64,000 nt of DNA. Origin: Macrostomum lignano (taxonomy: Eukaryota). Where the stretch lies: the NCBI GenBank assembly GCA_002269645.1, contig NIVC01000006.1, positions 62,001 through 126,000 of the forward strand, read 5' to 3'. A model generated the notes under the pieces. That model did no database searches. It saw only the letters and a program-made list of their open reading frames with translations, and was not told where the DNA came from. Position numbers and translations under genes: made by a program. Positions 37,201 to 61,913 of the stretch are shown in pieces (position 1 is the stretch's first letter; every line of letters begins with the position of its first letter).

Positions 37201-40200
37201 TGAAAGGTTTGTAGCTTCAATGGCTGAAGGTTTTGTAGCTTCAGTGGCTGAAGGTTTTGTAGCTTCAGTGGCTGAAGGGTTTGTAGCTTCAATGGCTAAA
37301 TGTTTTTTAGCTTCAGTGACTGAATGGTTTGTAGCTTCAGTGGCTGAAGGGTTTGTAGCTTCAGTGGCTGAAGGGTTTGTAGCTTCAGTGGCTGAAAGGC
37401 TTGTAGCTTCATGGGCTGAAGAGTTTGTAGCTTCAGTGGCTGAAGGGTTTGTAGTTTCAGTGGCTGAAAGGCTTGTAGCTTCATGGGCTGAAGAGTTTGT
37501 AGCTTCAGTGGCTGAAGGGTTTGTAGTTTCAGTGGCTGAAAGGCTTGTAGCTTCAATGGCTAAATGTTTTTTAGCTTCAGTGGCTGAAGAGTTTGTAGCT
37601 TCAGTGGCTGAAGGTTTTGTAGCTTCAGTGGCTGAAGGGTTTGTAGCTTCAGAGGCTGAAAGGCTTGTAGCTTCATGGGCTGAAGAGTTTGTAGCTTCAG
37701 TGGCTGAAGGTTTTGTAGCTTCAGTGGCTGAAGGGTTTGTAGCTTCAATGGCTAAATGTTTTTTAGCTTCAGTGGCTGAAGGTTTTGTAGCTTCAGTGGC
37801 TGAAGGTTTTGTAGCTTCAGTGGCTGAAGGGTTTGTAGCTTCAGTGGCTGAAAGGCTTGTAGCTTCATGGGCTGAAGAGTTTGTAGCTTCAGTGGCTGAA
37901 GGGTTTGTAGTTTCAGTGGCTGAAAGGCTTGTAGCTTCATGGGCTGAAGAGTTTGTAGCTTCAGTGGCTGAAGGGTTTGTAGTTTCAGTGGCTGAAGGGT
38001 TTGTAGCTTCAATGGCTAAATGCTTTTTAGCTTCAGTGGCTGAATGGTTTGTAGCTTCAGTGGCTGAAGGTTTTGTAGCTTCAGTGGCTGAAGGGTTTGT
38101 AGCTTCAGTGGCTGAAAGGCTTGTAGCTTCAGTGGCTGAAGGTTTTGTAGCTTCAGTGGCTGAAGGGTTTGTAGTTTCAGTGGCTGAAAGGCTTGTAGCT
38201 TCATGGGCTGAAGAGTTTGTAGCTTCAGTGGCTGAAGGGTTTGTAGTTTCAGTGGCTGAAAGGCTTGTAGCTTCAATGGCTAAATGTTTTTTAGCTTCAG
38301 TGGCTGAAGAGTTTGTAGCTTCAGTGGCTGAAGGTTTTGTAGCTTCAGTGGCTGAAGGGTTTGTAGCTTCAGAGGCTGAAAGGCTTGTAGCTTCATGGGC
38401 TGAAGAGTTTGTAGCTTCAGTGGCTGAAGGTTTTGTAGCTTCAGTGGCTGAAGGGTTTGTAGCTTCAATGGCTAAATGTTTTTTAGCTTCAGTGGCTGAA
38501 GGTTTTGTAGCTTCAGTGGCTGAAGGTTTTGTAGCTTCAGTGGCTGAAGGGTTTGTAGCTTCAGTGGCTGAAAGGCTTGTAGCTTCATGGGCTGAAGAGT
38601 TTGTAGCTTCAGTGGCTGAAGGGTTTGTAGTTTCAGTGGCTGAAAGGCTTGTAGCTTCATGGGCTGAAGAGTTTGTAGCTTCAGTGGCTGAAGGGTTTGT
38701 AGTTTCAGTGGCTGAAGGGTTTGTAGCTTCAATGGCTAAATGTTTTTTAGCTTCAGTGGCTGAATGGTTTGTAGCTTCAGTGGCTGAATGGTTTGTAGCT
38801 TCAGTGGCTGAAGGTTTTGTAGCTTCAGTGGCTGAAGGGTTTGTAGCTTCAGTGGCTGAAAGGCTTGTAGCTTCATGGGCTGAAGGTTTTGTAGCTTCAG
38901 TGGCTGAAGGGTTTGTAGCTTCAATGGCTGAAAGGCTTGTAGCTTCATGGGCTGAAGAGTTTGTAGCTTCAGTGGCTGAAGGGTTTGTAGCTTCAGTGGC
39001 TGAAGGGTTTGTAGCTTCAGGAGCTGATCTTTTAGCTTTAGCTCTTCCACCTTCATACCAACCTACCAACCTCGCAATCGCAATCGCCAATATTGTTTGC
39101 AACAGGTGTACACAGACCTGCGCCTGCTGTTGCCACCCGGAACCGGGTCTCTGGGCGCCTTCTTTGCCAGGCCTGACGGTTCAGTGGGGCGATATCGCTC
39201 CCAGGCGTCCCAGCCGGGAGGCGTCGAGCTGGGCCGATACAGCCTCAAACCGTACAGCTGTTCGGGGCATCCTTCTCATAAATTGCTGCTGGCCAACATC
39301 CCGGATGTTCTGACCAGCTCCGTGCCTCAACCAGCCGATGAATTGATAGCTCCGGTTCAGACTCGCAGCGAGCTGCTGTTACCTCTCGGCGATTCTTGCG
39401 GATCCGAATCCAGTATCCCGTGCGCCGTTGCGGTGCCGCCGGATTTCGGCGAAGACACAGACGATGTCGCTGAACGGATTGTTGAACGGCTGTTGGCATC
39501 TCTGGAGCCCGAGGCGGAGCCCGAATCGCCTAGGGCTGGCACACCTCAGCTGCCCGGCTTCTGCTCCGGTGAGCTCTGCTTTGGGATTAAAAATCGCCTC
39601 TGATAATCCCTCTGAACTGCTTCCGATAATCCCCTGAACTGCTTCCGGTAATCTCTCTGAACTGCTTCCTGTAATCTCTCTGAACTGCTTCCTGTAATCT
39701 CTCTGAACTGCTTCCGTAATCTCTCCTGAACTGCCTCTGATATCCCTCCTGACCTGAACTTTCTCTGGTAATCCCTCCTGAACTTTCTCTGATATCCCTC
39801 CTGAACTTTCTCTGATAATCCCTCCTGAACTTTCTCTGATAATCCCTCCTGAACTTTCTCTGATATCCCTCCTGAACTTTCTCTGATAATCCCTCCTGAA
39901 CTTTCTCTGATATCCCTCCTGAACTTTCTCTGATATTCCTCCTGAACTTTCTCTGGTAATCCCTCCTGAACTTTCTCTGATATCCCTCCTGAAATTTCTC
40001 TGATATCCCTCCTGAACTTTCTCTGATATCCCTCCTGAACTTTCTCTGATATCCCTCCTAAACTTTCTCTGATATTCCTCCTGAACTTTCTCTGGTATCC
40101 CTCCTGAAGTTTCTCTGGTAATCCCTCCTGAACTTTCTCTGATATTCCTCCTGAACTTTCTCTGATATCCCCCCTGAACTTTCTCTGATAATCCCTCCTG

Positions 40201-43200
40201 AACTTTCTCTGATAATCCCTCCTGAACTTTCTCTGGTAATCCCTCCTGAACTTTCTCTGATATTCCTCCTGAACTTTCTCTGATATTCCTCCTGAACTTT
40301 CTCTGATATCCCCCCTGAACTTTCTCTGGTAATCCCTCCTGAACTTTCTCTGATATCCCCCCTGAACTTTCTCTGGTAATCCCTCCTGAACTTTCTCTGA
40401 TAATCCCTCCTGAACTTTCTCTGATAATCCCTCCTGAACTTTCTCTGGTAATCCCTCCTGAACTTTCTCTGATATTCCTCCTGAACTTTCTCTGATATCC
40501 CCCCCCTGAACTTTCTCTGGTAATCCCTCCTGAACTTTCTCTGATATCCCTCCTGAACTTTCTCTGATAATCCCTCCTGAACTTTCTCTGGTAATCCCTC
40601 CTGAACTTTCTCTGGTAATCCCTCCTGAACTTTCTCTGGTAATCCCTCCTGAACTGTCTCTGGTATCCCTCAACTAATTCAAATACCCCAAATGCCCCCC
40701 CCAGAGTCCGTTGCCGTTGTTGCCGACGCTGCGGAAGATTCCATGGACACAGAGGCCAACCTGACGGACACCACCGACACCGGAGTGGCCGGGTCGCCAG
40801 CCGACCATCAGGCAGACGAAGACCAGGTCAGCGCCGACTCTCCAACAGTGCAGAGCGGGCAGCGAAATGGAGTTTCAACTCTAAGCGGCAATGTTATGCG
40901 CTCCCTCACCCGCCTGCTCGGGTTGGATTTCAACAGCCAACTGGAGCAGCTCATCCATCGGAATAAAAAGCACCGATTGAACTCTGCCAGAGACTCAGCC
41001 AGGCCTGCCATCGCCGCTCCGCCGCCGGTTCCGCCGACGCGTAGGCACGCCGAAGACGCGGTGACTGTGTCGTCGTTAATCTCCGCTAAGCAGCCTGTCG
41101 TATGCGCCAGGTGCGACCTGCCGATATTGTCGGCGGCTTCGGCTGTGCGGTGCCGTTCGAATCAGTTGGCTACCGACACTGCTGGAGCCTCTCTTGGCGA
41201 TGATCTTTCCAATTCTACTACTGCTACTACTACTAACCAAGTAGTAGCTCAAGCGTCGCAGCAGCAGGATGAATTGCTGTTCTGCAGTTCGCATTGCATG
41301 TCGTTGCATTCGAGGTCGCTCGCCGATGATGCCCAGCTTCCTGGTAGCGGAGGAAAGGTACGAATGTACTTTAGATAGGTCCCAATGTCCTTGATAGATC
41401 CCACCGTCTCTAGATGGGTCCCAGTATCCTTGATGGATTCCAGCGTCTCTATGTAGGTCCCAATGCCTCTAGGTTAGTCCCAATGCCTCTTGATAGGTCC
41501 CAATGCCTCTAGGTTAGTCCCAATGCCTCTTGATAGGTCCCAATGCCTCTAGCTAGGTCCCAACGTCTCTAGGTAGATCCCAATGCCTCTAGCTAGGTCC
41601 CAACGTCTCTAGGTAGATCTCAATGCCTCTAGATAGGTCCCAATGTCTCTAGATAGGTCTCGATGCCTCTAGATAGGTCCCAATGACTTAGGTAGGTCCC
41701 AATGCTTCTAGGTAAGTCCCAATGCCTCTATGTAAGTCCAATGCCTCTATGTAAGTCCCAATGCCTCTAGATAGGTCCAGAAATCTGACCCCCTTGATCC
41801 GCAATGTACTCTCCACTACAGGTATATACTTAGCAAATTATCGAGTCAAATCCCATATTTTCAATCTCGCCATCCCTGCAAATCTCCACCCCCTACCGGC
41901 AGCGTTCGGACGATTGGCTTGGCATTGCGAGCGAGCTCCGGCCCCAGCTCTACGTTGGCGACGACGATCAGCCGACCTCCGTCCCGGTGCTGCTGCAGCC
42001 GTCAGCCCCTGGCAACCGGGCGCGACAGCACCTGTTGGATCGGCCGCCCAGCCAGGCCCTGGGCGCCACCATCATCGGTATTCGGGCCGCCGCAGCGGCC
42101 GGCCTGGTGTCGCCCGCCTCTATCGCTCCGCCTTTGAGCTCCTTGGCTGCGACTGCGGCCTCCGCTCAATCGGCCGGCTTCTTTGGCGGCAATACCTCGT
42201 CGGCGTCCGCTGCCGCCGCCGCCGCCGCATCCGCCGCCGCGCTGTCTCGACGTCGAAGCTTGTCGTCAGCCGCGTCGACCCTGGATGGCAGCGGCGGTAT
42301 CGGCGGCGGCCTTTCTGAATCTTCCGGCGGCGGCGGTGTGCCAACTAAGAAATGGAAAGGGCTGCGCTGGCAAAAGTTCGGGCCGGATTTCCGGCCGGCT
42401 CAAGAGTACAGGCCGATGTCCGAGACCGAGATTGAAGAGGTGAGTTTTAATATCGAGATTTGCTATAGCTGAGATTTGGGTGGCGCACTTTAGTTCTAAA
42501 TATTGATTTTCTTATTGTAAGTTTGGGATTTCCCTATTCTGAATATTGTGATTTCCCTATTCTAAATATTGGGATTTCCCTATTCTGAATATTGGGATTT
42601 CCCTATTCTGATATTGGGATTTCCCTATTCTAAATATTGTGATTTCCCTATTCTAAATATTGATTTTCTTATTGTAAGTTTGGGATTTCCCTATTCTAAA
42701 TATTTGGATTTTCCTATTGTAAGTTTGGGATTTCCCAGTCCTAATATTGGGATTTCCCTATTCTAATTTTAGGATTTCTCTGTTGTAATGTGAGGATTCC
42801 CTATTCTAATATTGGTATTTCCCAAAAAGGGATTTTCTAAGTCTCACCGTTGGATTATCTATTCCAAAATTTTGATTCTCCAATTTCAAAACTGAGATTA
42901 CCCTACAAAAAATCAGGATTCCCGATTCTAAACTTCAAGTTAAAGAAAGTCTAGCTCCAGGCTTTGCCCTTCCTTCTGCCTTCTCCAGCTTCTCTACCGT
43001 CGCGGCCAGGCCATAAAGGCGCCAGCCGGCCTGGCCGACTACCGTCGCTGCGTGCTCTGCTCCGAGGCTGGCGACCTTCCGGCCGACGGCCCCGGCCGCC
43101 TGCTGAACCTGGACGCCGGGCGCTGGGTTCACCTCAACTGCGCCCTCTGGTGCTTCGACGTTTACGAAACCGTCTCCGGCGGCCTGGTGAATGTGGACAT

Positions 43201-49699: not shown

Positions 49700-50965
49700 G
49701 GGTCTACGATGTTTGCCTGCCGGACGTTTGCCAGCCGACGTTTGCCTGCGGAACGTCTGCCAGCCGACGTTTGCCAGCCGACGTTGGCCAGCGGGAAGTT
49801 TGCCAGCCGACGTTTGCCTGCGGGACGTTTGCCAGCCGACGTTTGCCTGCGGGACGTTTGCCTGCCGACGTTTGCCAGCCGACGTTTGCCAGCCGACGTT
49901 TGCCTGCCGACGTTTGCCTGCGCGACGTTTGCCAGCCGACGTTTGCCAGCCGACGTTTGCCAGCCGACGTTTGCCAGCCGACGTTTGCCTGCGGGACGTT
50001 TGCCAGCCCTCCAAAATGATACAATGGGGCATAGGTTTTAATTTTTGGTGCGGCTAGGGAAGAGAAGGCGGCTACAGACATGTCAGTGCATGCTTGTTGT
50101 TGGCCATGACAGCGTGCACTTGACAAGGCGCTTGCAGGAATTAGTTCGCTTACTTTTGGATCTCCCATGAACTGGGAAATATTCAATTTAAAATTATCGT
50201 TCAGCAGTTATTTTATTTGCTCAAAACTTGGCTCGCTGGAGATTCCCATTCAAATTTGCGTGTCAATTCATTCGCAAATCATGAAATCGCAAATCATGAA
50301 TTCGCAAATCATGCAAAATCAAACATCTTAAACTGGGAAAAGCGATACAAAACTGGCAGAAGTAAACTTTATAATAATATTTTTACATTCAATTAAAGAT
50401 GATGATGAACTGCTAAATATTAATTAATTTAGAGCGTATAGATTTTGTTTTCGATTTATACATCATGCGAATAAGTTAGCCGTCAATTAAAAAGTTGGAC
50501 TAAAATTGTTTTTTCCAAAACAGCTAAACTGCGAATATTTCAGTATCACATTCACTCCGACTTGCTGTTGGTTGGCAAACGTCGGCTGGCAAACGTCCCG
50601 CAGGCAAAAGTCGGCTGGCAAACGTCCCGCAGGCAAAAGTCGGCTGGCAAAGGTCCTGCAGGCAAACGTCCTGCAGGCAAACGTCCCGCAGGCAAACGTC
50701 GGCTGGCAAACGTCGGCTGGCAAACGTCGGCTGGCAAACGTCGGCTGGCAAATGTCGGCTGGCAAACGTCGGCTGGCAAACGTCCCGCAGGCAAACGTCC
50801 CGCAGGCAAACGTCGGCTGGCAAACGTCCCGCAGGCAAACGTCGGCTGGCAAACGTCCCGCAGGCAAACGTCGGCTGGCAAACGTCGGCTGGCAAACGTC
50901 GACTGGCAAACTTCCCGCAGGCAAACGTCGGCTGGCAAACGTCCCGCAGGCAAACGTCGCTATCC
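49700..50965. mobile_element. Non-autonomous foldback/MULE-like element (1266 bp); arms built of 14/15-bp GACGTTTGCCAGCC / GGGACGTTTGCCTGC repeats; 10-bp TSD
   Basis: Forward array 49710-50008, reverse-complement array 50571-50958, GG-starting termini, TGAAGAGGCT at 49690-49699 and 50966-50975. Confidence 0.85.
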
Positions 50966-51130
50966 TGAAGAGGCTCATGTATTATTGTTTTAGCAAAGGT
51001 TTCTGTTATTACTTTCCTAAAGTGCCACTTTTATCAAGAAACGTATGGTTTATTTTTGTTATTCTTGCTTTAACAAACCTATTTTAAACGTTTGAATTGT
51101 GTTCATGGAAAGTTTGATTAATATTCAAAT

Positions 51131-52450
51131 ACCATCCTTTTTGAGCTATATATTGACGACATTGTTGAATATCTTGAACTCTCTAGTGCTAGACGCTCTC
51201 TTACGAGATCTGCTTTCCCACTCATCCTGCTCTTTGCGGACGATCAAGCCATTCTAGCTAAAAACAAAGACGAACTTCAAGACACATTTACGACTATGGA
51301 AAATTACTGCAAGCAAAATTACTTGAAAGTAAATGCAAGCAAAACAAAGTTTATGCAGGGCAGTACCAGACAAAAAAACGACATAGAAAGCTTTGCTACA
51401 AAAATATTCTACGACAACCAAGAAATAGAGGAAGTAAATGAATTTAAATACCTGGGAATTATTTTTGAACCAAAAAACAGCTTCAAAAAATGTATTGAAC
51501 ATCAAACTAAGCAGGGATATACAGCTATGTTTTCCCTACTCCATAGGGTAAAGAATACGTCCCTGGACATCACACTCATTTGCAGACTATTCGACGCGCT
51601 TGTTACCCCCGTTATCACGTACGGCTGTGAGCTCTGGGGCCCTCTGGCCCCATTTCTGAAACAAAAGCTATTGATAACATTCAGCTGAAATTCTACAAAT
51701 ATCTCCTCAATCTACCAAAATTTGCTAGCAACAGCGTGATATCATCAGAACTTGAGCTTACTCCAATCTCCCAACGAATCGCTAAAACCTACCTTACCTA
51801 CTGGCTGAAGATTAGACACCAAAAACTTTGCCAAACGACACTAGAAATTTTCTACTCAAACACCAGCCAAAAAAATCCATGGAAAACGAATGTACTAAAG
51901 AAACTGGAAAGTATAGACTTGAAAGCACTAACTGAAGATAAACTTTCCCAAAGCTTTAATAACGAGAAATACCTAGTGAAAAAGCACCTCAAGATACACA
52001 GAGAAAGAGAACTTAGCCAAAAGCTAGAGAATCAGCAACATATTAGATTCTACAAAAACGCCTATCTCTACAAAAAAATCTGCAGGCCCGACCTTTCAGA
52101 TTACTTTCCATGCACATTTAGAAACAAAAAATTCCTAACAACCCTCCTAAAACTGAAATGCGAGATTACACCCAACATTTTCTCTCAAGAAGCATGTAGA
52201 CTGTGTGGAGCGAGAAATGGTTCCGATATCCTACACTACTTGACCGAATGTCCACAAACTGAAAAGATCAGAAAAAAATACTTCTGTCAATACCTCTTAA
52301 ATGACAAACAAGTACACAAGATAGGATATGCTACAAATGAAAAAAGAGTCAGAAAAGAGCTCACTAGTGTAGCTAAAATATATGAAGTCATGAATAGCTA
52401 AAACAGTTATGCAAACTGAAACAGATACATCAGCAGTGTAATAAATCCGC
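51131..52450 (+). mobile_element. 5'-truncated non-LTR retrotransposon (LINE) ORF2 remnant: RT C-terminal half plus C-terminal CCHC motif
   Basis: TILFELYIDD..LLFADDQAILA (YADD box), KTKFM, FKYLGIIF, YGCELWG, a frameshift near 51658, IQLKFYKYLL and CRLCGARNGSDILHYLTEC. Stop at 52399-52401 and AATAAA near 52440. Clade (L2/Crack/RTEX-like) not determined. Confidence 0.88.
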
Positions 52451-52685
52451 TTTTCAGTTGTTTATTCATTTACTGCCTTTTTAATTTCCTATTTAATTCG
52501 TCGTTAATCGTTAAACGTTAAGTTCGTTCGAAGTGTGTTTATGCTCGTTTTTCACGCTTTGAAATATCACGCGCTTTCAAAAATACTATATCTTTTTACA
52601 AAAATCGCCTATTATTGAGGACAATCCTTAATTATACTAGATATTTGTTATATTGACAAAATAATATTTAACTACCTTTTCTGAA

Positions 52686-53061
52686 GGGTCTCCCTAAAAC
52701 ACGCACCGCACCGCCCCGAACCGCTACACATTATAACATTTTTTGTCAATGCAGTATTTGATTGCAAAGAAAACTATGTGTTGTAAGAGTAATGGAATAA
52801 ATATCTTTAATTAATATTTTAAATAATATTTTTTTTATATTCTCGTTTTCATTATTAAATTATATTATTATTATTTTATGAATATTATTTTTAATATCAC
52901 TTATTACTCACCGAATTCTAAATTTGAAGTAAAAAAAACTAAACTTAATTAAAACTTTGAAGCTTAACAGAAAACGCATTTTGAACTGTCTTCAGTTATA
53001 GTCCAATTTGTTTTAATGTGTAGCGCTGCAGGGCGGTGCGGGGCGTGTTTTAGGGAGACCC
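52686..53061. mobile_element. MITE (376 bp), ~48-bp TIR GGGTCTCCCTAAAACACGC..GCTACACATTA, 8-bp TSD TTTCTGAA
   Basis: TIRs at 52686-52733 and 53014-53061; TSD at 52678-52685 and 53062-53069; AT-rich interior. Confidence 0.9.
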
Positions 53062-53651
53062 TTTCTGAATCGCATTTTAGAAGAATCGTTTTGCATTAAG
53101 GTCATTATATATATACAACATCGATTTTCTATTTTTCCCTGCTAGAATCTTGCTGTTCCGTTCCGTCGTTAGTCGTTAATCGGCTGAAAAAACCGTAAAA
53201 AATTCTTGACGCCCTTTCAAATACCTTACTTAATACAAATATCGTGTAGTACTCGTTTTCAGCGATCGTGTAAAATTTAACCTTTTGAATAAATACTAAA
53301 TAAATCGGATCATACTGGCATAACAGGCTCCTTAAGCCTGAGCCAAAATTTACTACTACTACTACTACTGATTAATATTCAAATTAATGATTCATTCATT
53401 TTCGTTATACACTTTAGTGTGTATTCCAGGGAAATACACAGCCCACAGGCTAACACAGATTTTCTACTACCTACCGTTTTAGATGCAGGGATTCCCCGAG
53501 CGATATTCAAGATCGATATTCGGAAATAACAAAAATCTTTGCTTTTAAAGCACCAAACGCTATGATTTTTTACAGAAAAAACATCACCCACGAGATAAAC
53601 CGACTTGAAAAAAATTACGGCTACAGATAGAAAGGAATTTTTACAATTTGC

Positions 53652-55271
53652 AAAAACTGATGTTCCTATCTCCACAATGCATTAGATTGATATTCGATTT
53701 CGAGTACTTCTGCTTGCTCTCTGTCGCTGAAAATTGACATGCAGGACTTCACCCAGACACTAAGCGATTATCATAACTCAAACCGAACTCAAGGCTTCAT
53801 GCTCGAGAACTATTCGAGAAAAACTGATGTTCCTATCTCCACAATGCATTAGATTGATATTCGATTTCGAGTACTTCTGCTTGCTCTCTGTCGCTGAAAA
53901 TTGACATGCAGGACTTCACCCAGACACTAAGCGATTATCATAACTCAAACCGAACTCAAAGCTTCATGCTCGAGAACTATTCGAGAAAAACTGATGTTCC
54001 TATCTCCACAATGCATTAGATTGATATTCGATTTCGAGTACTTCTGCTTGCTCTCTGTCGCTGAAAATTGACATGCAGGACTTCACCCAGACACTAAGCG
54101 ATTATCATAACTCAAACCGAACTCAAAGCTTCTTGCTCGAGAACTATTCGAGAAAAACTGATGTTCCTATCTCCACAATGCATTAGATTGATATTCGATT
54201 TCGAGTACTTCTGCTTGCTCTCTGTCGCTGAAAATTGACATGCAGGACTTCACCCAGACACTAAGCGATTATCATAACTCAAACCGAACTCAAAGCTTCA
54301 TGCTCGAGAACTATTCGAGAAAAACTGATGTTCCTATCTCCACAATGCATTAGATTGATATTCGATTTCGAGTACTTCTGCTTGCTCTCTGTCGCTGAAA
54401 ATTGACATGCAGGACTTCACCCAGACACTAAGCGATTATCATAACTCAAACCGAACTCAAAGCTTCATGCTCGAGAACTATTCGAGAAAAACTGATGTTC
54501 CTATCTCCACAATGCATTAGATTGATATTCGATTTCGAGTACTTCTGCTTGCTCTCTGTCGCTGAAAATTGACATGCAGGACTTCACCCAGACACTAAGC
54601 GATTATCATAACTCAAACCGAACTCAAGGCTTCATGCTCGAGAACTATTCGAGAAAAACTGATGTTCCTATCTCCACAATGCATTAGATTGATATTCGAT
54701 TTCGAGTACTTCTGCTTGCTCTCTGTCGCTGAAAATTGACATGCAGGACTTCACCCAGACACTAAGCGATTATCATAACTCAAACCGAACTCAAAGCTTC
54801 ATGCTCGAGAACTATTCGAGAAAAACTGATGTTCCTATCTCCACAATGCATTAGATTGATATTCGATTTCGAGTACTTCTGCTTGCTCTCTGTCGCTGAA
54901 AATTGACATGCAGGACTTCACCCAGACACTAAGCGATTATCATAACTCAAACCGAACTCAAAGCTTCATGCTCGAGAACTATTCGAGAAAAACTGATGTT
55001 CCTATCTCCACAATGCATTAGATTGATATTCGATTTCGAGTACTTCTGCTTGCTCTCTGTCGCTGAAAATTGACATGCAGGACTTCACCCAGACACTAAG
55101 CGATTATCATAACTCAAACCGAACTCAAAGCTTCATGCTCGAGAACTATTCGAGAAAAACTGATGTTCCTATCTCCACAATGCATTAGATTGATATTCGA
55201 TTTCGAGTACTTCTGCTTGCTCTCTGTCGCTGAAAATTGACATGCAGGACTTCACCCAGACACTAAGCGAT
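53652..55271 (+). repeat. 167-bp satellite array, left arm (~9.7 copies)
   Basis: Period 167 (CTGATGTTCC at 53657, 53824, 53991...); near-identical units. Confidence 0.97.
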
Positions 55272-55274
55272 TGT

Positions 55275-55757
55275 CTGTAATCTCTCCGTAATCTCTCCTG
55301 AACTGCCTCTGATATCCCTCCTGACCTGAACTTTCTCTGGTAATCCCTCCTGAACTTTCTCTGGTATCCCTCCTGAAGTTTCTCTGGTAATCCCTCCTGA
55401 ACTTTCTCTGATAATCCCTCCTGAACTTTCTCTGGTAATCCCTCCTGAACTTTCTCTGATATTCCTCCTGAACTTTCTCTGATATTCCTCCTGAACTTTC
55501 TCTGATATCCCCCCTGAACTTTCTCTGGTAATCCCTCCTGAACTTTCTCTGATATCCCCCCTGAACTTTCTCTGGTAATCCCTCCTGAACTTTCTCTGAT
55601 AATCCCTCCTGAACTTTCTCTGATAATCCCTCCTGAACTTTCTCTGGTAATCCCTCCTGAACTTTCTCTGATATTCCTCCTGAACTTTCTCTGATATCCC
55701 CCCCCTGAACTTTCTCTGGTAATCCCTCCTGAACTTTCTCTGATATCCCTCCTGAAC
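55275..55757. repeat. 22/23-bp minisatellite identical in variant order to part of KMT2 intron 11
   Basis: Same idiosyncratic variants (CCTGACCTGAAC, CTGAAGTTT, C7 run) in the same order as 39714-40558. Confidence 0.92.
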
Positions 55758-56040
55758 TGAACAGTGCATTAGACTGGGATAATAATTTTGTTCTTTGTGT
55801 GAATATATAGTAAGATATTTGCATGCATGATGTACATATATTGGCTGATTCACAATAATTTTTTAAAAGATTCTCTACGAACTATAGTAAGCACTGACTC
55901 ATTAGGTTCAATCAGTTAAATTGATTTCATTAAGCCATGCAGCACTATTAAAATTTTTCGCGTTGTGTACACTGACCTGCCTACTTGGACTGTTCGTACA
56001 GTTCCATGCCGTGCAATCAAACATGGTATTTCATTTTTAG

Positions 56041-56822
56041 GAAGCCCGTTTGATTTTGGTTCCCATGTTTACTGGAAGCCATTTTACCTGGTAGCGATTA
56101 ACGTATCAGCTAGAAATGTTTACCTCTTCGACTCCTCTACCAGTAATATCCGCCAGCAGAATGCGTTGCCCAGAATTGTAGAAAACTGGAAGTAAGAAGC
56201 TTTTCCCTTCAACCTTTGACTTCAGATAAGACAATTATGAATGTAAGGATACACATCCATGTAAGCTTTTCCGAACACCAATTGTAGTGCTTTTCTACGT
56301 CTGGCACCAAAAGAAATCTACGAGTATTTTTCACTCAAAGAAAATACTACTTTTCGCAGTGACAACGCTCCACACACTAAGCAAGACGATTCTTTTAGTT
56401 GTGGTGCCTTCGTCTGCTTGTATGCCAGAAGCATAATTCTTGGTAGGGAGCTACAATATCAGAAAGCAAGCAAAGAATTTCTTGAGAATGTGCGTTGTTA
56501 CATATGGAAAGTAATCAGTAACAACTCCGTCGATAGCAACCAAGGTTCTTGTGCCATTTGTCAAGCAGAAGAGCCACCAAAAGCAGACGGTGCAGCAACA
56601 ATTGATTGGGTAAGTTGTAAAATTCTTGTACCTATAAATACCTCTGTGCCAAATATCCATACACTTGTACTCACTTTACCTTTACTTCTTTTACATGCAC
56701 TACTGGTAGATTGAGTGCTCATCCTGTCTTGACTGCATGGATCCACTGCGTCTGTGCATCCACAACGCAAGAAGAGGAAAACTTCTGCTGCTCGACCTGC
56801 AGAAGTTCTCGAGCATGAAGCT
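56041..56822 (+). pseudogene. Spliced Ulp1-like (C48 SUMO/cysteine protease) plus PHD finger gene fragment, frameshifted
   Basis: Exons 56041-56191, 56288-56609 and 56710-56822 with GT-AG introns. LILVPMFTGSHF/YLVAIN..YLFDS and KQDDSFSCGAF give the His-Asp-Gln-Cys catalytic set. CAICQ..IDW|IECSSC/..WIHCVC..FCCSTC is a PHD pattern. Frameshifts near 56084 and 56730. Confidence 0.8.
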
Positions 56823-59800
56823 TTGAGTTCGGTTTGAGTTATGATAATCGCTTAGTGTCTGGGTGAAGTCCTGCATGTCAATTTTCAGCGACAGAGAGCA
56901 AGCAGAAGTACTCGAAATCGAATATCAATCTAATGCATTGTGGAGATAGGAACATCAGTTTTTCTCGAATAGTTCTCGAGCATGAAGCCTTGAGTTCGGT
57001 TTGAGTTATGATAATCGCTTAGTGTCTGGGTGAAGTCCTGCATGTCAATTTTCAGCGACAGAGAGCAAGCAGAAGTACTCGAAATCGAATATCAATCTAA
57101 TGCATTGTGGAGATAGGAACATCAGTTTTTCTCGAATAGTTCTCGAGCATGAAGCTTTGAGTTCGGTTTGAGTTATGATAATCGCTTAGTGTCTGGGTGA
57201 AGTCCTGCATGTCAATTTTCAGCGACAGAGAGCAAGCAGAAGTACTCGAAATCGAATATCAATCTAATGCATTGTGGAGATAGGAACATCAGTTTTTCTC
57301 GAATAGTTCTCGAGCATGAAGCCTTGAGTTCGGTTTGAGTTATGATAATCGCTTAGTGTCTGGGTGAAGTCCTGCATGTCAATTTTCAGCGACAGAGAGC
57401 AAGCAGAAGTACTCGAAATCGAATATCAATCTAATGCATTGTGGAGATAGGAACATCAGTTTTTCTCGAATAGTTCTCGAGCATGAAGCCTTGAGTTCGG
57501 TTTGAGTTATGATAATCGCTTAGTGTCTGGGTGAAGTCCTGCATGTCAATTTTCAGCGACAGAGAGCAAGAAGAAGTACTCGAAATCGAATATCAATCTA
57601 ATGCATTGTGGAGATAGGAACATCAGTTTTTCTCGAATAGTTCTCGAGCATGAAGCCTTGAGTTCGGTTTGAGTTATGATAATCGCTTAGTGTCTGGGTG
57701 AAGTCCTGCATGTCAATTTTCAGCGACAGAGAGCAAGCAGAAGTACTCGAAATCGAATATCAATCTAATGCATTGTGGAGATAGGAACATCAGTTTTTCT
57801 CGAATAGTTCTCGAGCATGAAGCTTTGAGTTCGGTTTGAGTTATGATAATCGCTTAGTGTCTGGGTGAAGTCCTGCATGTCAATTTTCAGCGACAGAGAG
57901 CAAGCAGAAGTACTCGAAATCGAATATCAATCTAATGCATTGTGGAGATAGGAACATCAGTTTTTCTCGAATAGTTCTCGAGCATGAAGCTTTGAGTTCG
58001 GTTTGAGTTATGATAATCGCTTAGTGTCTGGGTGAAGTCCTGCATGTCAATTTTCAGCGACAGAGAGCAAGCAGAAGTACTCGAAATCGAATATCAATCT
58101 AATGCATTGTGGAGATAGGAACATCAGTTTTTCTCGAATAGTTCTCGAGCATGAAGCTTTGAGTTCGGTTTGAGTTATGATAATCGCTTAGTGTCTGGGT
58201 GAAGTCCTGCATGTCAATTTTCAGCGACAGAGAGCAAGCAGAAGTACTCGAAATCGAATATCAATCTAATGCATTGTGGAGATAGGAACATCAGTTTTTC
58301 TCGAATAGTTCTCGAGCATGAAGCTTTGAGTTCGGTTTGAGTTATGATAATCGCTTAGTGTCTGGGTGAAGTCCTGCATGTCAATTTTCAGCGACAGAGA
58401 GCAAGCAGAAGTACTCGAAATCGAATATCAATCTAATGCATTGTGGAGATAGGAACATCAGTTTTTCTCGAATAGTTCTCGAGCAAGAAGCTTTGAGTTC
58501 GGTTTGAGTTATGATAATCGCTTAGTGTCTGGGTGAAGTCCTGCATGTCAATTTTCAGCGACAGAGAGCAAGCAGAAGTACTCGAAATCGAATATCAATC
58601 TAATGCATTGTGGAGATAGGAACATCAGTTTTTCTCGAATAGTTCTCGAGCAAGAAGCTTTGAGTTCGGTTTGAGTTATGATAATCGCTTAGTGTCTGGG
58701 TGAAGTCCTGCATGTCAATTTTCAGCGACAGAGAGCAAGCAGAAGTACTCGAAATCGAATATCAATCTAATGCATTGTGGAGATAGGAACATCAGTTTTT
58801 CTCGAATAGTTCTCGAGCATGAAGCTTTGAGTTCGGTTTGAGTTATGATAATCGCTTAGTGTCTGGGTGAAGTCCTGCATGTCAATTTTCAGCGACAGAG
58901 AGCAAGCAGAAGTACTCGAAATCAAATATCAATCTAATGCATTGTGGAGATAGGAACATCAGTTTTTCTCGAATAGTTCTCGAGCATGAAGCTTTGAGTT
59001 CGGTTTGAGTTATGATAATCGCTTAGTGTCTGGGTGAAGTCCTGCATGTCAATTTTCAGCGACAGAGAGCAAGCAGAAGTACTCGAAATCGAATATCAAT
59101 CTAATGCATTGTGGAGATAGGAACATCAGTTTTTCTCGAATAGTTCTCGAGCATGAAGCTTTGAGTTCGGTTTGAGTTATGATAATCGCTTAGTGTCTGG
59201 GTGAAGTCCTGCATGTCAATTTTCAGCGACAGAGAGCAAGCAGAAGTACTCGAAATCGAATATCAATCTAATGCATTGTGGAGATAGGAACATCAGTTTT
59301 TCTCGAATAGTTCTCGAGCATGAAGCTTTGAGTTCGGTTTGAGTTATGATAATCGCTTAGTGTCTGGGTGAAGTCCTGCATGTCAATTTTCAGCGACAGA
59401 GAGCAAGCAGAAGTACTCGAAATCGAATATCAATCTAATGCATTGTGGAGATAGGAACATCAGTTTTTCTCGAATAGTTCTCGAGCATGAAGCTTTGAGT
59501 TCGGTTTGAGTTATGATAATCGCTTAGTGTCTGGGTGAAGTCCTGCATGTCAATTTTCAGCGACAGAGAGCAAGCAGAAGTACTCGAAATCGAATATCAA
59601 TCTAATGCATTGTGGAGATAGGAACATCAGTTTTTCTCGAATAGTTCTCGAGCATGAAGCTTTGAGTTCGGTTTGAGTTATGATAATCGCTTAGTGTCTG
59701 GGTGAAGTCCTGCATGTCAATTTTCAGCGACAGAGAGCAAGCAGAAGTACTCGAAATCGAATATCAATCTAATGCATTGTGGAGATAGGAACATCAGTTT

Positions 59801-60971
59801 TTCTCGAATAGTTCTCGAGCAAGAAGCTTTGAGTTCGGTTTGAGTTATGATAATCGCTTAGTGTCTGGGTGAAGTCCTGCATGTCAATTTTCAGCGACAG
59901 AGAGCAAGCAGAAGTACTCGAAATCGAATATCAATCTAATGCATTGTGGAGATAGGAACATCAGTTTTTCTCGAATAGTTCTCGAGCAAGAAGCTTTGAG
60001 TTCGGTTTGAGTTATGATAATCGCTTAGTGTCTGGGTGAAGTCCTGCATGTCAATTTTCAGCGACAGAGAGCAAGCAGAAGTACTCGAAATCGAATATCA
60101 ATCTAATGCATTGTGGAGATAGGAACATCAGTTTTTCTCGAATAGTTCTCGAGCATGAAGCTTTGAGTTCGGTTTGAGTTATGATAATCGCTTAGTGTCT
60201 GGGTGAAGTCCTGCATGTCAATTTTCAGCGACAGAGAGCAAGCAGAAGTACTCGAAATCAAATATCAATCTAATGCATTGTGGAGATAGGAACATCAGTT
60301 TTTCTCGAATAGTTCTCGAGCATGAAGCTTTGAGTTCGGTTTGAGTTATGATAATCGCTTAGTGTCTGGGTGAAGTCCTGCATGTCAATTTTCAGCGACA
60401 GAGAGCAAGCAGAAGTACTCGAAATCGAATATCAATCTAATGCATTGTGGAGATAGGAACATCAGTTTTTCTCGAATAGTTCTCGAGCATGAAGCTTTGA
60501 GTTCGGTTTGAGTTATGATAATCGCTTAGTGTCTGGGTGAAGTCCTGCATGTCAATTTTCAGCGACAGAGAGCAAGCAGAAGTACTCGAAATCGAATATC
60601 AATCTAATGCATTGTGGAGATAGGAACATCAGTTTTTCTCGAATAGTTCTCGAGCATGAAGCTTTGAGTTCGGTTTGAGTTATGATAATCGCTTAGTGTC
60701 TGGGTGAAGTCCTGCATGTCAATTTTCAGCGACAGAGAGCAAGCAGAAGTACTCGAAATCGAATATCAATCTAATGCATTGTGGAGATAGGAACATCAGT
60801 TTTTCTCGAATAGTTCTCGAGCATGAAGCTTTGAGTTCGGTTTGAGTTATGATAATCGCTTAGTGTCTGGGTGAAGTCCTGCATGTCAATTTTCAGCGAC
60901 AGAGAGCAAGCAGAAGTACTCGAAATCGAATATCAATCTAATGCATTGTGGAGATAGGAACATCAGTTTTT
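56803..60971 (-). repeat. 167-bp satellite array, right arm (~25 copies), reverse complement of the left arm
   Basis: Direct repetition in inverted orientation. Confidence 0.97.
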
Positions 60972-61506
60972 GCAAATTGTAAAAATTCCTTTCTATCTGT
61001 AGCCGTAATTTTTTCAAGTCGGTTTATCTCGTGGGTGATGTTTTTTCTGTAAAAAATCATAGCGTTTGGTGCTTTAAAAGCAAAGATTTTTGTTATTTCC
61101 GAATATCGATCTTGAATATCGCTCGGGGAATCCCTGCATCCGTTTTAGCCTGTCTGTAACTGCATCCAGCTGTGGATGTCTTTAGATAAACTGGATAAAA
61201 TCTATCTATAGACAATTTCGATGATTGTTTTTTAATTTATTTATTTATTTCAGCTCATTAGGCCTACTTAACCCCTAACTTAGCCTCTAGATCTAGCCCC
61301 CTAGTCTAGGGGCCAGGCCACTAGGTCTAATTTAAAGGATATGCTGCATGCATAGTCATAGACATAGGGGCGATCCTACAGTTTTCCACTTTTAATTATT
61401 TTTTGGCTTTTTTGAAAAATTATGGCATAGCTAGAATAAGAAATGAAAATAAACTTATATAATAGTCACAACAGTTAACTCATAGCGATAGCTCATTTTA
61501 GCTCAG

Positions 61507-61736
61507 TTAGCTCATACTCATAGCAATGTTGCAGTTCTTGCACTGCAAAGAGTTCCAGATTAGCCCATAACGACTGAGCCAGCACATTGCCAATTGTGTG
61601 TCTGGTATCAGCAGTACCAGCTCCTGATGATTGACATCCAGGGGGATTCCAGGGCAGCCATTCCAGTCAATGCATCGGCAGGTTCAATTTCTGCAGGTGG
61701 GATGATTGTCGTTGGTGCAGGTGGACAACCGGCCAT
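61507..61736 (-). pseudogene. Possible N-terminal remnant of a Merlin/IS1595 (ISXO2)-like transposase
   Basis: Frame reads DTQLAMCWLSRYGLIWNSLQCKNCNIAMSM, resembling the GL(L/I)..CxxC..M N-terminus of these transposases. Frameshifted, no DDE domain seen. Confidence 0.35.
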
Positions 61737-61913
61737 TGCAGCTTAGCTGAAATGCAGAAAAAAGCCGAAAAATAATTAAAAGTGGAAAACTGTAGGATTG
61801 CCAAGTAGCCAACATAGGGTCTATTATATAGGCCTAATTTATTCCTAATATAAATGACTAGGAATACTTTTGTTTGGCATCAATCTACAACTTAATGCTT
61901 GTACTAACATAAG

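What the first reader, a model, noticed from the sequence alone, without database searches (positions are those of the whole stretch)
53474..61148. 7.66-kb satellite-armed foldback transposon: a mobile vehicle for a 167-bp satellite with protease/chromatin-reader cargo
Structure: TSD, 170-bp TIR, (167 bp)x~10, captured minisatellite, Ulp1-PHD gene fragment, inverted (167 bp)x~25, TIR, TSD. About 75% of the element is a homogeneous, near-nucleosome-length satellite in palindromic arrangement, and the perfect TSD and TIRs imply recent mobility without an internal transposase. The motif GATATTC occurs in both the TIR and the satellite unit, possibly as a transposase-binding site. This could be an undescribed MULE/foldback family that seeds and spreads satellite DNA.
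Basis: partly seen in the sequence, partly recalled or inferred. Interest (0 to 1): 0.82.

Follow-up and report, generated by a model that had tools for sequence, protein, structure and literature searches.

The report
Satellite-armed Rehavkus-type foldback transposon
This is a real 7.66-kb jumping-gene relic whose two inverted arms are built of a 167-bp satellite repeat, but it belongs to an already described kind (Rehavkus/foldback DNA transposons), and its "protease/chromatin-reader cargo" is the leftover tail of its own transposase gene.

Summary
The window shows a 9-bp direct repeat (CCGTTTTAG), 169/168-nt terminal inverted repeats, and inverted 167-bp arrays of 9.7 and 25 copies. These surround a 1.5-kb core made of a 24-bp minisatellite and a Ulp1-PHD coding remnant.

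The remnant aligns (hhalign 98.8%, E 6e-17) with the extreme C-terminus of a family of roughly 1010-1212-aa proteins. The central domain of those proteins matches published Rehavkus DDE transposase domains (hhalign 99.9%, E 8e-34) and does not match canonical MULEs. Published Rehavkus elements have 9-bp target-site duplications (TSDs), long terminal inverted repeats (TIRs), a C-terminal PHD finger and subterminal tandem repeats. In Tribolium they carry 164-bp-class satellites of up to 50 monomers in their inverted termini. The element is therefore best read as an internally deleted, non-autonomous Rehavkus-type foldback transposon, and the Ulp1-PHD piece as vestigial rather than cargo.

The minisatellite is genuinely captured. 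It is a contracted copy of an array in an intron of the neighbouring KMT2C/D-like gene about 15 kb upstream, including 371 bp at 100% identity, which points to filler DNA from interrupted gap repair.

Novelty: new member of a known kind. Interest is modest. Copy number, an autonomous partner and any genome-wide spread of the satellite could not be tested.

The parts
53474..53482 (.). Left copy of the target-site duplication CCGTTTTAG (9 bp; 7-9 bp ambiguity)
   Evidence: Read directly. The flanks are otherwise unrelated.
53483..53651 (+). Left terminal inverted repeat, 169 nt, terminus ATGCAGGGATTCCCC...; contains CGATATTC twice
   Evidence: 99.4% identical to the right TIR, one indel.
53652..55275 (+). 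Left arm: 167-bp satellite, 9.7 monomers; the innermost monomer is cut at position 121
55276..55758 (+). Filler DNA: a contracted copy of the 24-bp minisatellite from the KMT2C/D-like gene intron
   Evidence: The unit-by-unit map is collinear with 39598-40671. 371 bp (55388-55758) are 100% identical to 40189-40559, and 79 bp (55285-55363) are identical to 39713-39791.
39598..40671 (+). Probable donor of the filler: a 24-bp minisatellite array in an intron of the host KMT2C/D-like gene. It lies outside the element and is listed because it explains part of the core.
55759..55964 (+). Unassigned 206-bp AT-rich spacer between the filler and the coding remnant; probably intron or degraded coding sequence of the deleted gene
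   Evidence: Unique in the window. No protein match.
55965..56191 (+). Transposase remnant, exon-like block 1: Ulp1 catalytic His and Asp region
56192..56287 (+). Intron 1 (GT...AG, 96 bp). Splicing recreates the family-conserved W-N-x-F motif.
   Evidence: compared with the A2 consensus WNKFV.
56288..56609 (+). Transposase remnant, block 2: Ulp1 catalytic Cys (QDDSFSCG), linker and the first CxxC of the PHD finger
56610..56709 (+). Intron 2 (GT...AG, 100 bp). A related copy from another organism (L002) has an intron at the same position.
56710..56818 (+). Transposase remnant, block 3: rest of the PHD finger. A 4-nt insertion at about 56735-56738 shifts the frame. The natural C-terminus ...CCSTCRSSRA and its stop codon (56816-56818) lie inside the first inverted monomer.
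56804..60971 (-). Right arm: 167-bp satellite in inverted orientation, 25 monomers. The variant pattern at monomers 5-7 and 13-15 indicates an 8-monomer duplication.
60972..61139 (-). Right terminal inverted repeat, 168 nt
61140..61148 (.). Right copy of the target-site duplication CCGTTTTAG

Best explanation
The element is an internally deleted, non-autonomous member of the Rehavkus group of MULE-related cut-and-paste DNA transposons, in its foldback form. It has two ~169-nt terminal inverted repeats, each followed inward by a tandem array of a 167-bp unit.

Shown:
- the anatomy and the target-site duplication;
- the homology of the coding remnant to the C-terminal Ulp1-PHD module of Rehavkus-type transposases;
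- the absence of any DDE domain in the window;
- the origin of the minisatellite in a nearby host intron.

Inferred:
- An autonomous ancestor encoded one protein made of a zinc DNA-binding domain, a Rehavkus DDE domain, Ulp1 and PHD, with its 3' end abutting the 3' array.
- Excision followed by gap repair copied the element back from both ends. Synthesis broke off inside the left array and in the gene, switched template to the minisatellite ~15 kb away on the same strand, and rejoined.
- That left only the last ~220 codons, and it left arms of unequal length (10 against 25 monomers) through slippage or unequal exchange.
- The copy can now move only if a transposase is supplied in trans and recognises the TIRs, and possibly repeated sites in the arms.
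- The arm arrays expand and contract, and could seed free satellite arrays, as documented for Rehavkus in Tribolium.
For: Structure.

Remnant homology:
- The library-wide HMMER search with block 2 gives 15 hits, including P0017, a 1212-aa protein ending in Ulp1 + PHD.
- Its relatives P0021-P0024 are 1010-1057 aa.
- hhalign of that family against the window's conceptual protein gives 98.8%, E 6.1e-17, over profile columns 856-1028 of 1030.

Family identity:
- BLASTP of all five members covers most or all of the published Rehavkus DDE domains. The best case is P0017 442-765 against Rehavkus-1_TC 1-307 at 89.7 bits.
- hhalign of the family DDE region against the six-sequence Rehavkus alignment gives 99.9%, E 7.6e-34 over 303 columns. 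Against plant MULEs it gives 0.1%. The reference sequences come from PMC6446971 Additional file 3.
- The profile against PDB sequences confirms Ulp1 (1euv, 1.3e-12) and PHD at the C-terminus. Foldseek on the model agrees for Ulp1.

Published Rehavkus traits:
- TSD 9 bp, TIR 26-412 bp, one ORF, PHD finger, and a minisatellite before the 3' TIR (Table S1).
- A 164-bp satellite lies in the inverted termini of Rehavkus-1_TC, and up to 50 monomers in Rehavkus-3_TC.
- Tandem repeats also follow the gene's 3' end in the two related contigs with enough flank: L001 has 186 bp x 15, and L003 has about 310-375 bp x 4-5.

Filler origin.

Pseudogene state: two GT-AG introns and a 4-nt frameshift, with an intron position shared with L002.

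Second element: another foldback with a unique 9-bp TSD lies 2.5 kb upstream of the element's left end.
Against: - No catalytic domain is present in this copy, so superfamily assignment rests on the remnant plus structural hallmarks.
- Ulp1+PHD modules are also reported at the C-termini of Ginger1 and other MuDR-type transposases (PMC2836005). They also occur in proteins without a DDE part (P0013 and P0015), which are as similar to the remnant (33-35% identity) as P0017 is (32%).
- The TSD length is formally 7-9 bp.
- The related family members show D or N at the presumed first catalytic position, and their DDE region could not be modelled (pLDDT below 50).
- No second copy of the TIR or the satellite could be found. 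The collections reachable by DNA are essentially prokaryotic or metagenomic, so mobility as a family is not shown.
- No inverted 5' array was seen in the held part of L001.
Confidence: 0.7

Rival explanations
1. Pack-MULE-like capture. The Ulp1-PHD piece is a fragment of a host SUMO-protease/PHD gene picked up by a foldback element and carried as cargo.
For: - The element demonstrably captured host DNA, the intron minisatellite.
- The piece has introns.
- Ulp1-PHD proteins without a DDE part exist and are equally similar: P0013 and P0015.
Against: - The piece is collinear with the very C-terminus of Rehavkus-type transposases, down to the final CxxC and a stop 5 codons later.
- It points toward and abuts the 3' array, as the intact gene does in L001.
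- A PHD finger at the transposase C-terminus is a Rehavkus hallmark.
- Transposon genes with introns are common (Ginger1 table).
- No close host homologue was found.
Confidence: 0.12
2. The element is a foldback transposon of another superfamily: P/Galileo-like (7-8-bp TSD, long TIRs with tandem repeats), Zisupton/KDZ (8-bp TSD, Ulp1-bearing transposase) or Ginger1 (Ulp1+PHD).
For: - The TSD could be read as 7 or 8 bp.
- Ulp1 modules occur in several superfamilies.
- Zisupton makes 8-bp TSDs.
- One family member gave a faint Tnp_P_element_C hit, E 0.13.
Against: - The only DDE-bearing relatives of the remnant are Rehavkus-type.
- They give no Pfam KDZ or MULE hit even at E up to 10.
- Ginger1 is reported to have a short TSD with TGT..ACA-type termini (figures from my own recall; one search confirms only that Ginger1 TSDs are characterised). 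Here the terminus is (G)ATGCAGG and the direct repeat is 9 bp.
- The 9-bp reading needs the fewest coincidences, and a second foldback in the window has an unambiguous, unique 9-bp TSD.
Confidence: 0.08
3. Assembly artefact. The palindromic arrangement comes from a chimeric long read or a mis-join in satellite DNA.
For: - The monomers are extremely homogeneous.
- A 371-bp block is 100% identical to a locus about 15 kb away. Such sequence is hard to assemble.
Against: - The arms are unequal and the core is unique, with a coherent gene remnant.
- Both flanks are unique and are bracketed by a perfect 9-bp duplication.
- The filler is a contracted copy of the intron array, not a verbatim one.
- The architecture matches a published transposon type.
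Confidence: 0.03
4. Two independent one-ended insertions (TIR plus array) in opposite orientation happen to flank ordinary host DNA.
For: The core contains host-derived minisatellite sequence.
Against: - A single 9-bp duplication brackets the whole structure. Two separate insertions would each have their own.
- The inner ends are truncated monomers joined to filler and to a transposase C-terminus.
Confidence: 0.02

Closest known systems
Rehavkus-1_TC and Rehavkus-3_TC of Tribolium castaneum/freemani (Repbase; PMC6446971, PMC10218199, PMC12581902)
   Same: - 9-bp TSD and long TIRs (412 and 283 bp there, 169 here).
- Satellite-type monomers of nucleosomal length in the inverted termini (164 bp there, 167 here).
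- Variable monomer numbers (2-50 there, 10 and 25 here).
- PHD finger at the transposase C-terminus.
- Relatives of the remnant carry a DDE domain that matches these elements.
   Different: - This copy has lost the DDE domain and is 7.66 kb, against 9.5-18.5 kb.
- The host is not an arthropod or annelid as far as can be told. The best KMT2 matches are to flatworms and a mollusc.
- No nucleotide similarity could be tested, because no Repbase DNA was available.
- The papers read here do not mention a Ulp1 domain for Rehavkus.
Tetris foldback transposon of Drosophila virilis (PMC4079207)
   Same: A non-autonomous foldback element whose TIRs contain ~220-bp internal tandem repeats, which also form free satellite arrays. 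This is the same 'transposon as satellite nursery' logic.
   Different: The abstract read here names no transposase or superfamily for Tetris, and Tetris shares its TIR ends with the MITE DAIBAM. Here a transposase vestige allows assignment.
Classical Drosophila Foldback (FB) and Galileo (P superfamily) elements
   Same: Long inverted arms built of tandem repeats, little or no coding capacity, and unequal arms.
   Different: FB arms are made of short, degenerating repeats without a distinct unique TIR. Galileo makes 7-bp TSDs and encodes a P-type transposase.
Ulp1-bearing transposases: KI-MULEs of plants, MuDR-type elements of hydra and lancelet, and Ginger1 with Ulp1+PHD (PMC2836005)
   Same: A Ulp1 (C48) catalytic domain, sometimes followed by a PHD finger, fused to or carried with the transposase.
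   Different: Ginger1 is an integrase-type element with different termini and a short TSD (one search confirms the integrase-type transposase; the terminus and TSD figures are from my own recall). Plant KI-MULEs carry ULP as a separate, captured gene. Here the module is the C-terminus of a Rehavkus-type DDE protein.
Internally deleted elements with filler DNA from interrupted gap repair
   Same: Both ends and the TSD are retained, the centre is replaced, and the breakpoints are joined to ectopic filler.
   Different: The donor of the filler is identifiable here, ~15 kb away on the same strand. It is a minisatellite whose unit map is preserved.

Membership tests
Rehavkus group (MULE-related DNA transposons) | 9-bp target-site duplication | tested here: met
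   CCGTTTTAG lies at 53474-53482 and 61140-61148. The 9-bp reading is the most parsimonious, but 7 or 8 bp cannot be excluded because of a G/C overlap with the TIR.
Rehavkus group (MULE-related DNA transposons) | Long terminal inverted repeats (26-412 bp in described members) | tested here: met
   169/168 nt with one indel. The published range comes from Table S1 of PMC6446971.
Rehavkus group (MULE-related DNA transposons) | Subterminal tandem repeats (a minisatellite before the 3' TIR; satellite arrays in the inverted termini in Tribolium) | tested here: met
   167-bp arrays lie directly inside both TIRs.
Rehavkus group (MULE-related DNA transposons) | Transposase with the Rehavkus-type DDE domain | tested here: inconclusive
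   This copy has no DDE domain (tblastn), so the feature cannot be scored on the element itself. The only DDE-bearing relatives of its coding remnant match Rehavkus DDE domains (hhalign 99.9%, E 7.6e-34) and not canonical MULEs (0.1%).
Rehavkus group (MULE-related DNA transposons) | PHD finger at the C-terminus of the transposase | tested here: met
   The remnant ends in CAIC...WIECSSC..WIHCVC...CCSTC, aligned to the family PHD. It is disabled by a 4-nt insertion.
Rehavkus group (MULE-related DNA transposons) | Nucleotide similarity of the termini to a described Rehavkus family, or an autonomous partner with the same TIRs in the same genome | not testable with these tools
   Neither Repbase DNA nor the source genome was available. 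DNA and exact-ORF look-ups found nothing.
Foldback-type transposons (structural class) | Long inverted arms composed mainly of tandem repeats, a short middle and no functional transposase | tested here: met
   The arms are 1.79 and 4.34 kb, 76% of the element is satellite, and the core holds only a pseudogene remnant.
Pack-MULE-like gene capture | Internal segment copied from a host locus | tested here: met
   Met for the non-coding minisatellite, whose donor is the intron array at 39598-40671. Not met for the Ulp1-PHD piece, which is transposase-derived.
Zisupton / KDZ | KDZ-type transposase; 8-bp TSD | tested here: not met
   The remnant's full-length relatives give no KDZ Pfam hit at E up to 10 and are Rehavkus-type instead. 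TSD length alone is inconclusive.
Ginger1 | Gypsy-integrase-like transposase, short TSD, TGT..ACA-type termini | tested here: not met
   The termini are (G)ATGCAGG...CCTGCAT(C) and the direct repeat is 9 bp. The relatives have no integrase domain. The terminus and TSD criteria for Ginger1 are from my own recall; one search confirms only the integrase-type transposase.
Satellite DNA in the strict sense (long chromosomal arrays) | The 167-bp unit forms long arrays outside the transposon or is a major genome component | not testable with these tools
   Within the 64-kb window the monomer occurs only inside the element.

The most novel reading that the evidence does not exclude
This could be a snapshot of a currently active Rehavkus lineage in a spiralian (possibly flatworm) host, outside the arthropod/annelid range reported so far. 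In that reading the 167-bp arm repeat is in the act of becoming, or already is, a chromosomal (even centromeric) satellite. The in-situ filler capture from the neighbouring KMT2 intron would then record a very recent excision-repair event.
Probability: 0.2. Interest if true: 0.5.

Novelty: new member of a known kind. Interest (0 to 1): 0.3.

Why it matters
The element is a clean, well-preserved example of how foldback DNA transposons carry and resize satellite-type arrays. That process is already documented in Tribolium (Rehavkus) and Drosophila virilis (Tetris).

Three modest additions come from this copy:
- The vestigial gene links the element to a Rehavkus-type transposase family that ends in a Ulp1 + PHD module.
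- The host appears to lie outside the reported Rehavkus host range (arthropods and annelids), though its identity is unresolved.
- The captured filler can be traced unit by unit to an intron about 15 kb away, which is unusually direct evidence for local template switching during gap repair.

For annotation, the 'Ulp1/PHD gene' here should be masked as transposon-derived and not called a host gene.

Tried and rejected
- **Word-based homologue search** with the spliced Ulp1-PHD protein found nothing. The exhaustive HMMER search with block 2 was needed instead.
- **TIR as a degenerate monomer:** the local alignment is not significant (score 21, reached by 23 of 300 shuffles). The shared GATATTC-type motifs remain only suggestive. 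GATATTCG is nevertheless almost confined to the element (1 of 36 occurrences lies outside).
- **Exact-ORF look-ups** with the satellite ORF and the TIR ORF, meant to find other copies, returned nothing.
- **DNA pattern scans:** the scan of prokaryotic genome contigs gave 0 hits, and the viral scan failed.
- **Metagenome scan for relatives** of the transposase family gave only 2 short loci, with no tandem repeats in the 700 bp available.
- **AlphaFold model of P0021:** confident only for the N-terminal domain and Ulp1. The DDE part has pLDDT below 50, so Foldseek returned only Ulp1/SENP structures.
- **Pfam and NCBIfam** give no transposase family for the relatives. Membership was settled instead with published Rehavkus sequences.
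- **Termini of the full-length relative in L001:** no TIR or inverted array lies in the held 20.6 kb, and the rest of the contig could not be fetched.
- **Rfam and tRNA scans** of 47-64 kb found nothing.
- **Host identification:** only that the neighbouring gene is KMT2C/D-like, with best matches to Clonorchis and Paragonimus (65-66% identity) and to Lymnaea and a pseudoscorpion (58-59%).
Full report
**1. What is in the sequence**

Tandem Repeats Finder reports a 167-bp array at 53652-55272 (9.7 copies, 99% matches). It reports the reverse complement of the same unit at 56804-60971 (25.0 copies, 99%). The inverted-repeat search pairs the two blocks over up to 1667 nt at about 100% complementarity.

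Cutting the arrays into monomers shows only five variable positions among 35 monomers. The variants at positions 142 and 148 are shared by both arms, but at different monomer positions. The right-arm pattern at monomers 5-7 recurs at monomers 13-15, so an 8-monomer block was duplicated.

Outside the arrays lie 169- and 168-nt inverted repeats, 53483-53651 and 60972-61139, which differ by one A-run indel. Immediately outside them the 9-mer CCGTTTTAG is repeated in direct orientation at 53474-53482 and 61140-61148. The flanks are otherwise unrelated. The chance of a 9-bp match at fixed positions is about 4e-6.

Because the repeat ends in G and begins with C, the TIR could be one base longer and the duplication 7 or 8 bp. 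Nine needs the fewest coincidences. Neither the TIR nor the monomer occurs elsewhere in the window.

**2. The core**

The 1.5-kb middle (55276-56803) has two parts. The first is a 24-bp minisatellite (55288-55758). The second is a coding remnant on the + strand.

The remnant has three exon-like blocks: 55965-56191, 56288-56609 and 56710-56818. They are separated by two GT...AG introns of 96 and 100 bp. The first splice recreates a W-N-x-F motif that is conserved in the relatives.

The spliced product matches Peptidase_C48/Ulp1 (24.6 bits, cut-off 20.7) and continues into a PHD-type Cys4-His-Cys3 pattern. A 4-nt insertion at about 56735-56738 shifts the frame between CSSCLD and WIHCVC. Without it the sequence reads IECSSCLDWIHCVCAS...CCSTCRSSRA-stop. 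The stop codon (56816-56818) already lies inside the innermost inverted monomer, so the C-terminus is complete. The N-terminal half of the Ulp1 domain and everything upstream are missing.

**3. What the remnant is a remnant of**

A word-based search found no homologue. The exhaustive HMMER search with block 2 found 15. Among them are short ORF fragments from other organisms: P0006 at 54% identity, P0007 and P0008. P0006 and P0008 come from the same sequencing run, so the sequence is multi-copy there.

The hits also include two Ulp1-PHD proteins without a further domain (P0013, P0015) and P0017, a 1212-aa protein ending in Ulp1 + PHD. P0017 has four relatives of 1010-1057 aa at 37-39% identity over about 80% of its length.

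Their alignment shows the following:
- an N-terminal Cys/His domain;
- a central region with the motifs L[D/N]ATGS, VTDFSWxLIH, C[A/T]NH and SNxxVE[N/G]WFxxVK;
- the Ulp1 and PHD modules.

A profile of the family hits yeast Ulp1 (1euv, E 1.3e-12) and PHD fingers only in its last 270 positions. The window's conceptual protein aligns to profile columns 856-1028 of 1030, the extreme C-terminus, with 98.8% probability and E 6e-17.

**4. Which transposon family**

Pfam and NCBIfam give no transposase name for the central region. An AlphaFold model was confident only for the N-terminal domain and Ulp1.

The literature supplied the lead. The Rehavkus group (Repbase; treated as sister or outgroup of MULEs) is summarised (Table 1 of PMC6446971) as having these features:
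- a 9-bp TSD and TIRs of 26-400 bp;
- a minisatellite before the 3' TIR.

In Tribolium these elements are called foldback transposons. They carry satellite monomers in their inverted termini: a 164-bp unit in the 9.5-kb Rehavkus-1_TC, and 2 to 50 monomers in other families. One such repeat has expanded to an 80-kb free array.

I took the six Rehavkus DDE-domain sequences and five plant MULE controls from Additional file 3 of PMC6446971.
- All five members of the P0017 family align across most or all of a Rehavkus domain, with best hits of 72-90 bits. None aligns with the MULE controls.
- Profile against profile, the family's DDE region matches the Rehavkus alignment at 99.9% probability, E 7.6e-34, over 303 columns. 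Against the MULE alignment it gives 0.1%.

The full-length relatives of the remnant are therefore Rehavkus-type transposases. In the two related contigs with more than 2 kb of downstream DNA, tandem repeats follow the gene. L001 has 186 bp x 15 starting about 570 bp after the stop. L003 has degenerate units of about 310-375 bp x 4-5.

**5. The captured minisatellite**

The same 24-bp family forms a 1.07-kb array at 39598-40671 in the same orientation. That array sits in an intron of a KMT2C/D-like gene that occupies about 22-47.3 kb of the + strand. The gene has PHD clusters, FYRN/FYRC and SET domains.

A unit-by-unit map shows the element's array to be a contracted copy of the intron array:
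- Its units 1-3 equal intron units 2-4, including an odd partial unit (CCTGA|CCTGA).
- Its units 4-5 equal intron units 17-18.
- Its units 6-20 equal intron units 22-36, in the same order.

At base level, 371 bp (55388-55758) are 100% identical to 40189-40559, and 79 bp (55285-55363) are identical to 39713-39791.

The left junction cuts a satellite monomer at position 121, and the array's right end stops mid-unit. This is what interrupted gap repair with template switching leaves behind. That model is established for deletion derivatives of cut-and-paste elements, and its application here is an inference. It also suggests the deletion happened at or near the present site and recently, because minisatellite maps decay fast.

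**6. Most likely mechanism**

An autonomous Rehavkus-type element inserted here, or nearby, and made the 9-bp duplication. A later excision-repair cycle restored both ends but not the middle. It lost the DNA-binding and DDE parts of the gene, filled the gap with the intron minisatellite, and left arms of different length.

The copy is now non-autonomous. [quoted passage not shown] That would explain why such arrays persist. Here it remains an inference.

TIR and monomer share AGATyGATATTCG and ATGCAGGnnTTC, but this is not statistically secure. I put about 0.9 on 'non-autonomous foldback-type DNA transposon with satellite arms', and about 0.7 on the full statement (Rehavkus-type, vestigial own gene, locally captured filler).

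**7. Rivals**

- **Host-gene cargo** is weakened by the collinearity with the transposase C-terminus and by the remnant's position and orientation against the 3' array. Ulp1-PHD proteins without a DDE part do exist, however.
- **Other superfamilies** fare no better. Zisupton has an 8-bp TSD, and Ginger1 carries Ulp1+PHD. P/Galileo I recall as making 7-bp TSDs. None is supported, because the DDE-bearing relatives are Rehavkus-type and the termini and duplication do not fit Ginger.
- **An assembly palindrome or two independent insertions** do not explain a single duplication bracketing unequal arms, a unique core and unique flanks.

**8. Limits**

The source genome is unknown. The KMT2 exon's best matches are flatworms at 65-66% identity and a snail and a pseudoscorpion at 58-59%. 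No collection that I could scan by DNA contains the TIR or the satellite.

Copy number, the autonomous partner, free satellite arrays, chromosomal location and expression are all untested.

**9. Verdict**

The structure is real and attractive, but it is a new member of a known kind. The 'vehicle for satellite DNA' concept is already published for Rehavkus and Tetris. Interest 0.3.

Noticed in passing
window 49691-50975: A second, smaller foldback element of 1267 bp (49700-50966). Its arms are inverted arrays of a 14/29-bp unit (CGACGTTTGCCAGC)n, at about 49707-50007 and 50567-50959, around a ~560-bp spacer. It is bracketed by the 9-mer GAAGAGGCT, which occurs only at these two places in the 64-kb window. 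It has the same TSD length as the main element but no sequence similarity to it.
   Followed up: partly
window 51115-53384: A likely 5'-truncated non-LTR retrotransposon (about 51132-53368). It has RT-C-terminal-like ORFs (51296-51688 and 51736-52401, no Pfam hit), a (TAC)6 tail, and a 16-bp target duplication TGATTAATATTCAAAT at 51115 and 53369. The foldback element sits about 100 bp downstream of it.
   Followed up: partly
window 52684-53063: A 380-bp MITE-like insertion inside the retrotransposon tail. It has 55-nt inverted ends (91% identical, starting GGGTCTCCCTAAAACACGC) and an 8-bp duplication TTTCTGAA, which suggests a hAT-type element.
   Followed up: partly
window 61369-61802: Another MITE-like unit of 434 bp with 45-nt inverted ends (96% identical), just downstream of the element. 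Its TSD was not resolved.
   Followed up: no
window 1-47330: The window is extraordinarily rich in minisatellites: dozens of arrays of 8-70-bp units, 0.2-2.2 kb each. Many lie in the introns of a large KMT2C/D-like gene on the + strand. That gene has ePHD at about 23.2-23.9 kb, PHD clusters at 25-27 kb, FYRN/FYRC at 44.4-45.0 kb, and SET/post-SET ending at 47330. Its exons are GC-rich (55-64% GC), while the intergenic DNA is 27-38% GC.
   Followed up: partly
L001 10001-17285 (JGI metagenome 3300056999, contig Ga0558716_16351): An apparently intact, intron-less 1212-aa Rehavkus-type transposase gene with C-terminal Ulp1 + PHD, followed by fifteen 186-bp tandem repeats. A perfect 52-bp palindrome lies at 18196-18247. 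No TIR was found in the held 20.6 kb. Three of the five family members have N instead of D at the presumed first catalytic position.
   Followed up: partly
L002, L008, L009 (Logan runs SRR31628392 and SRR31628425): Short contigs from another, unidentified organism carry diverged Ulp1-PHD remnants (46-54% identical to the window's). In L002 an intron sits at the same place inside the PHD finger, which suggests a related multi-copy element family there.
   Followed up: partly
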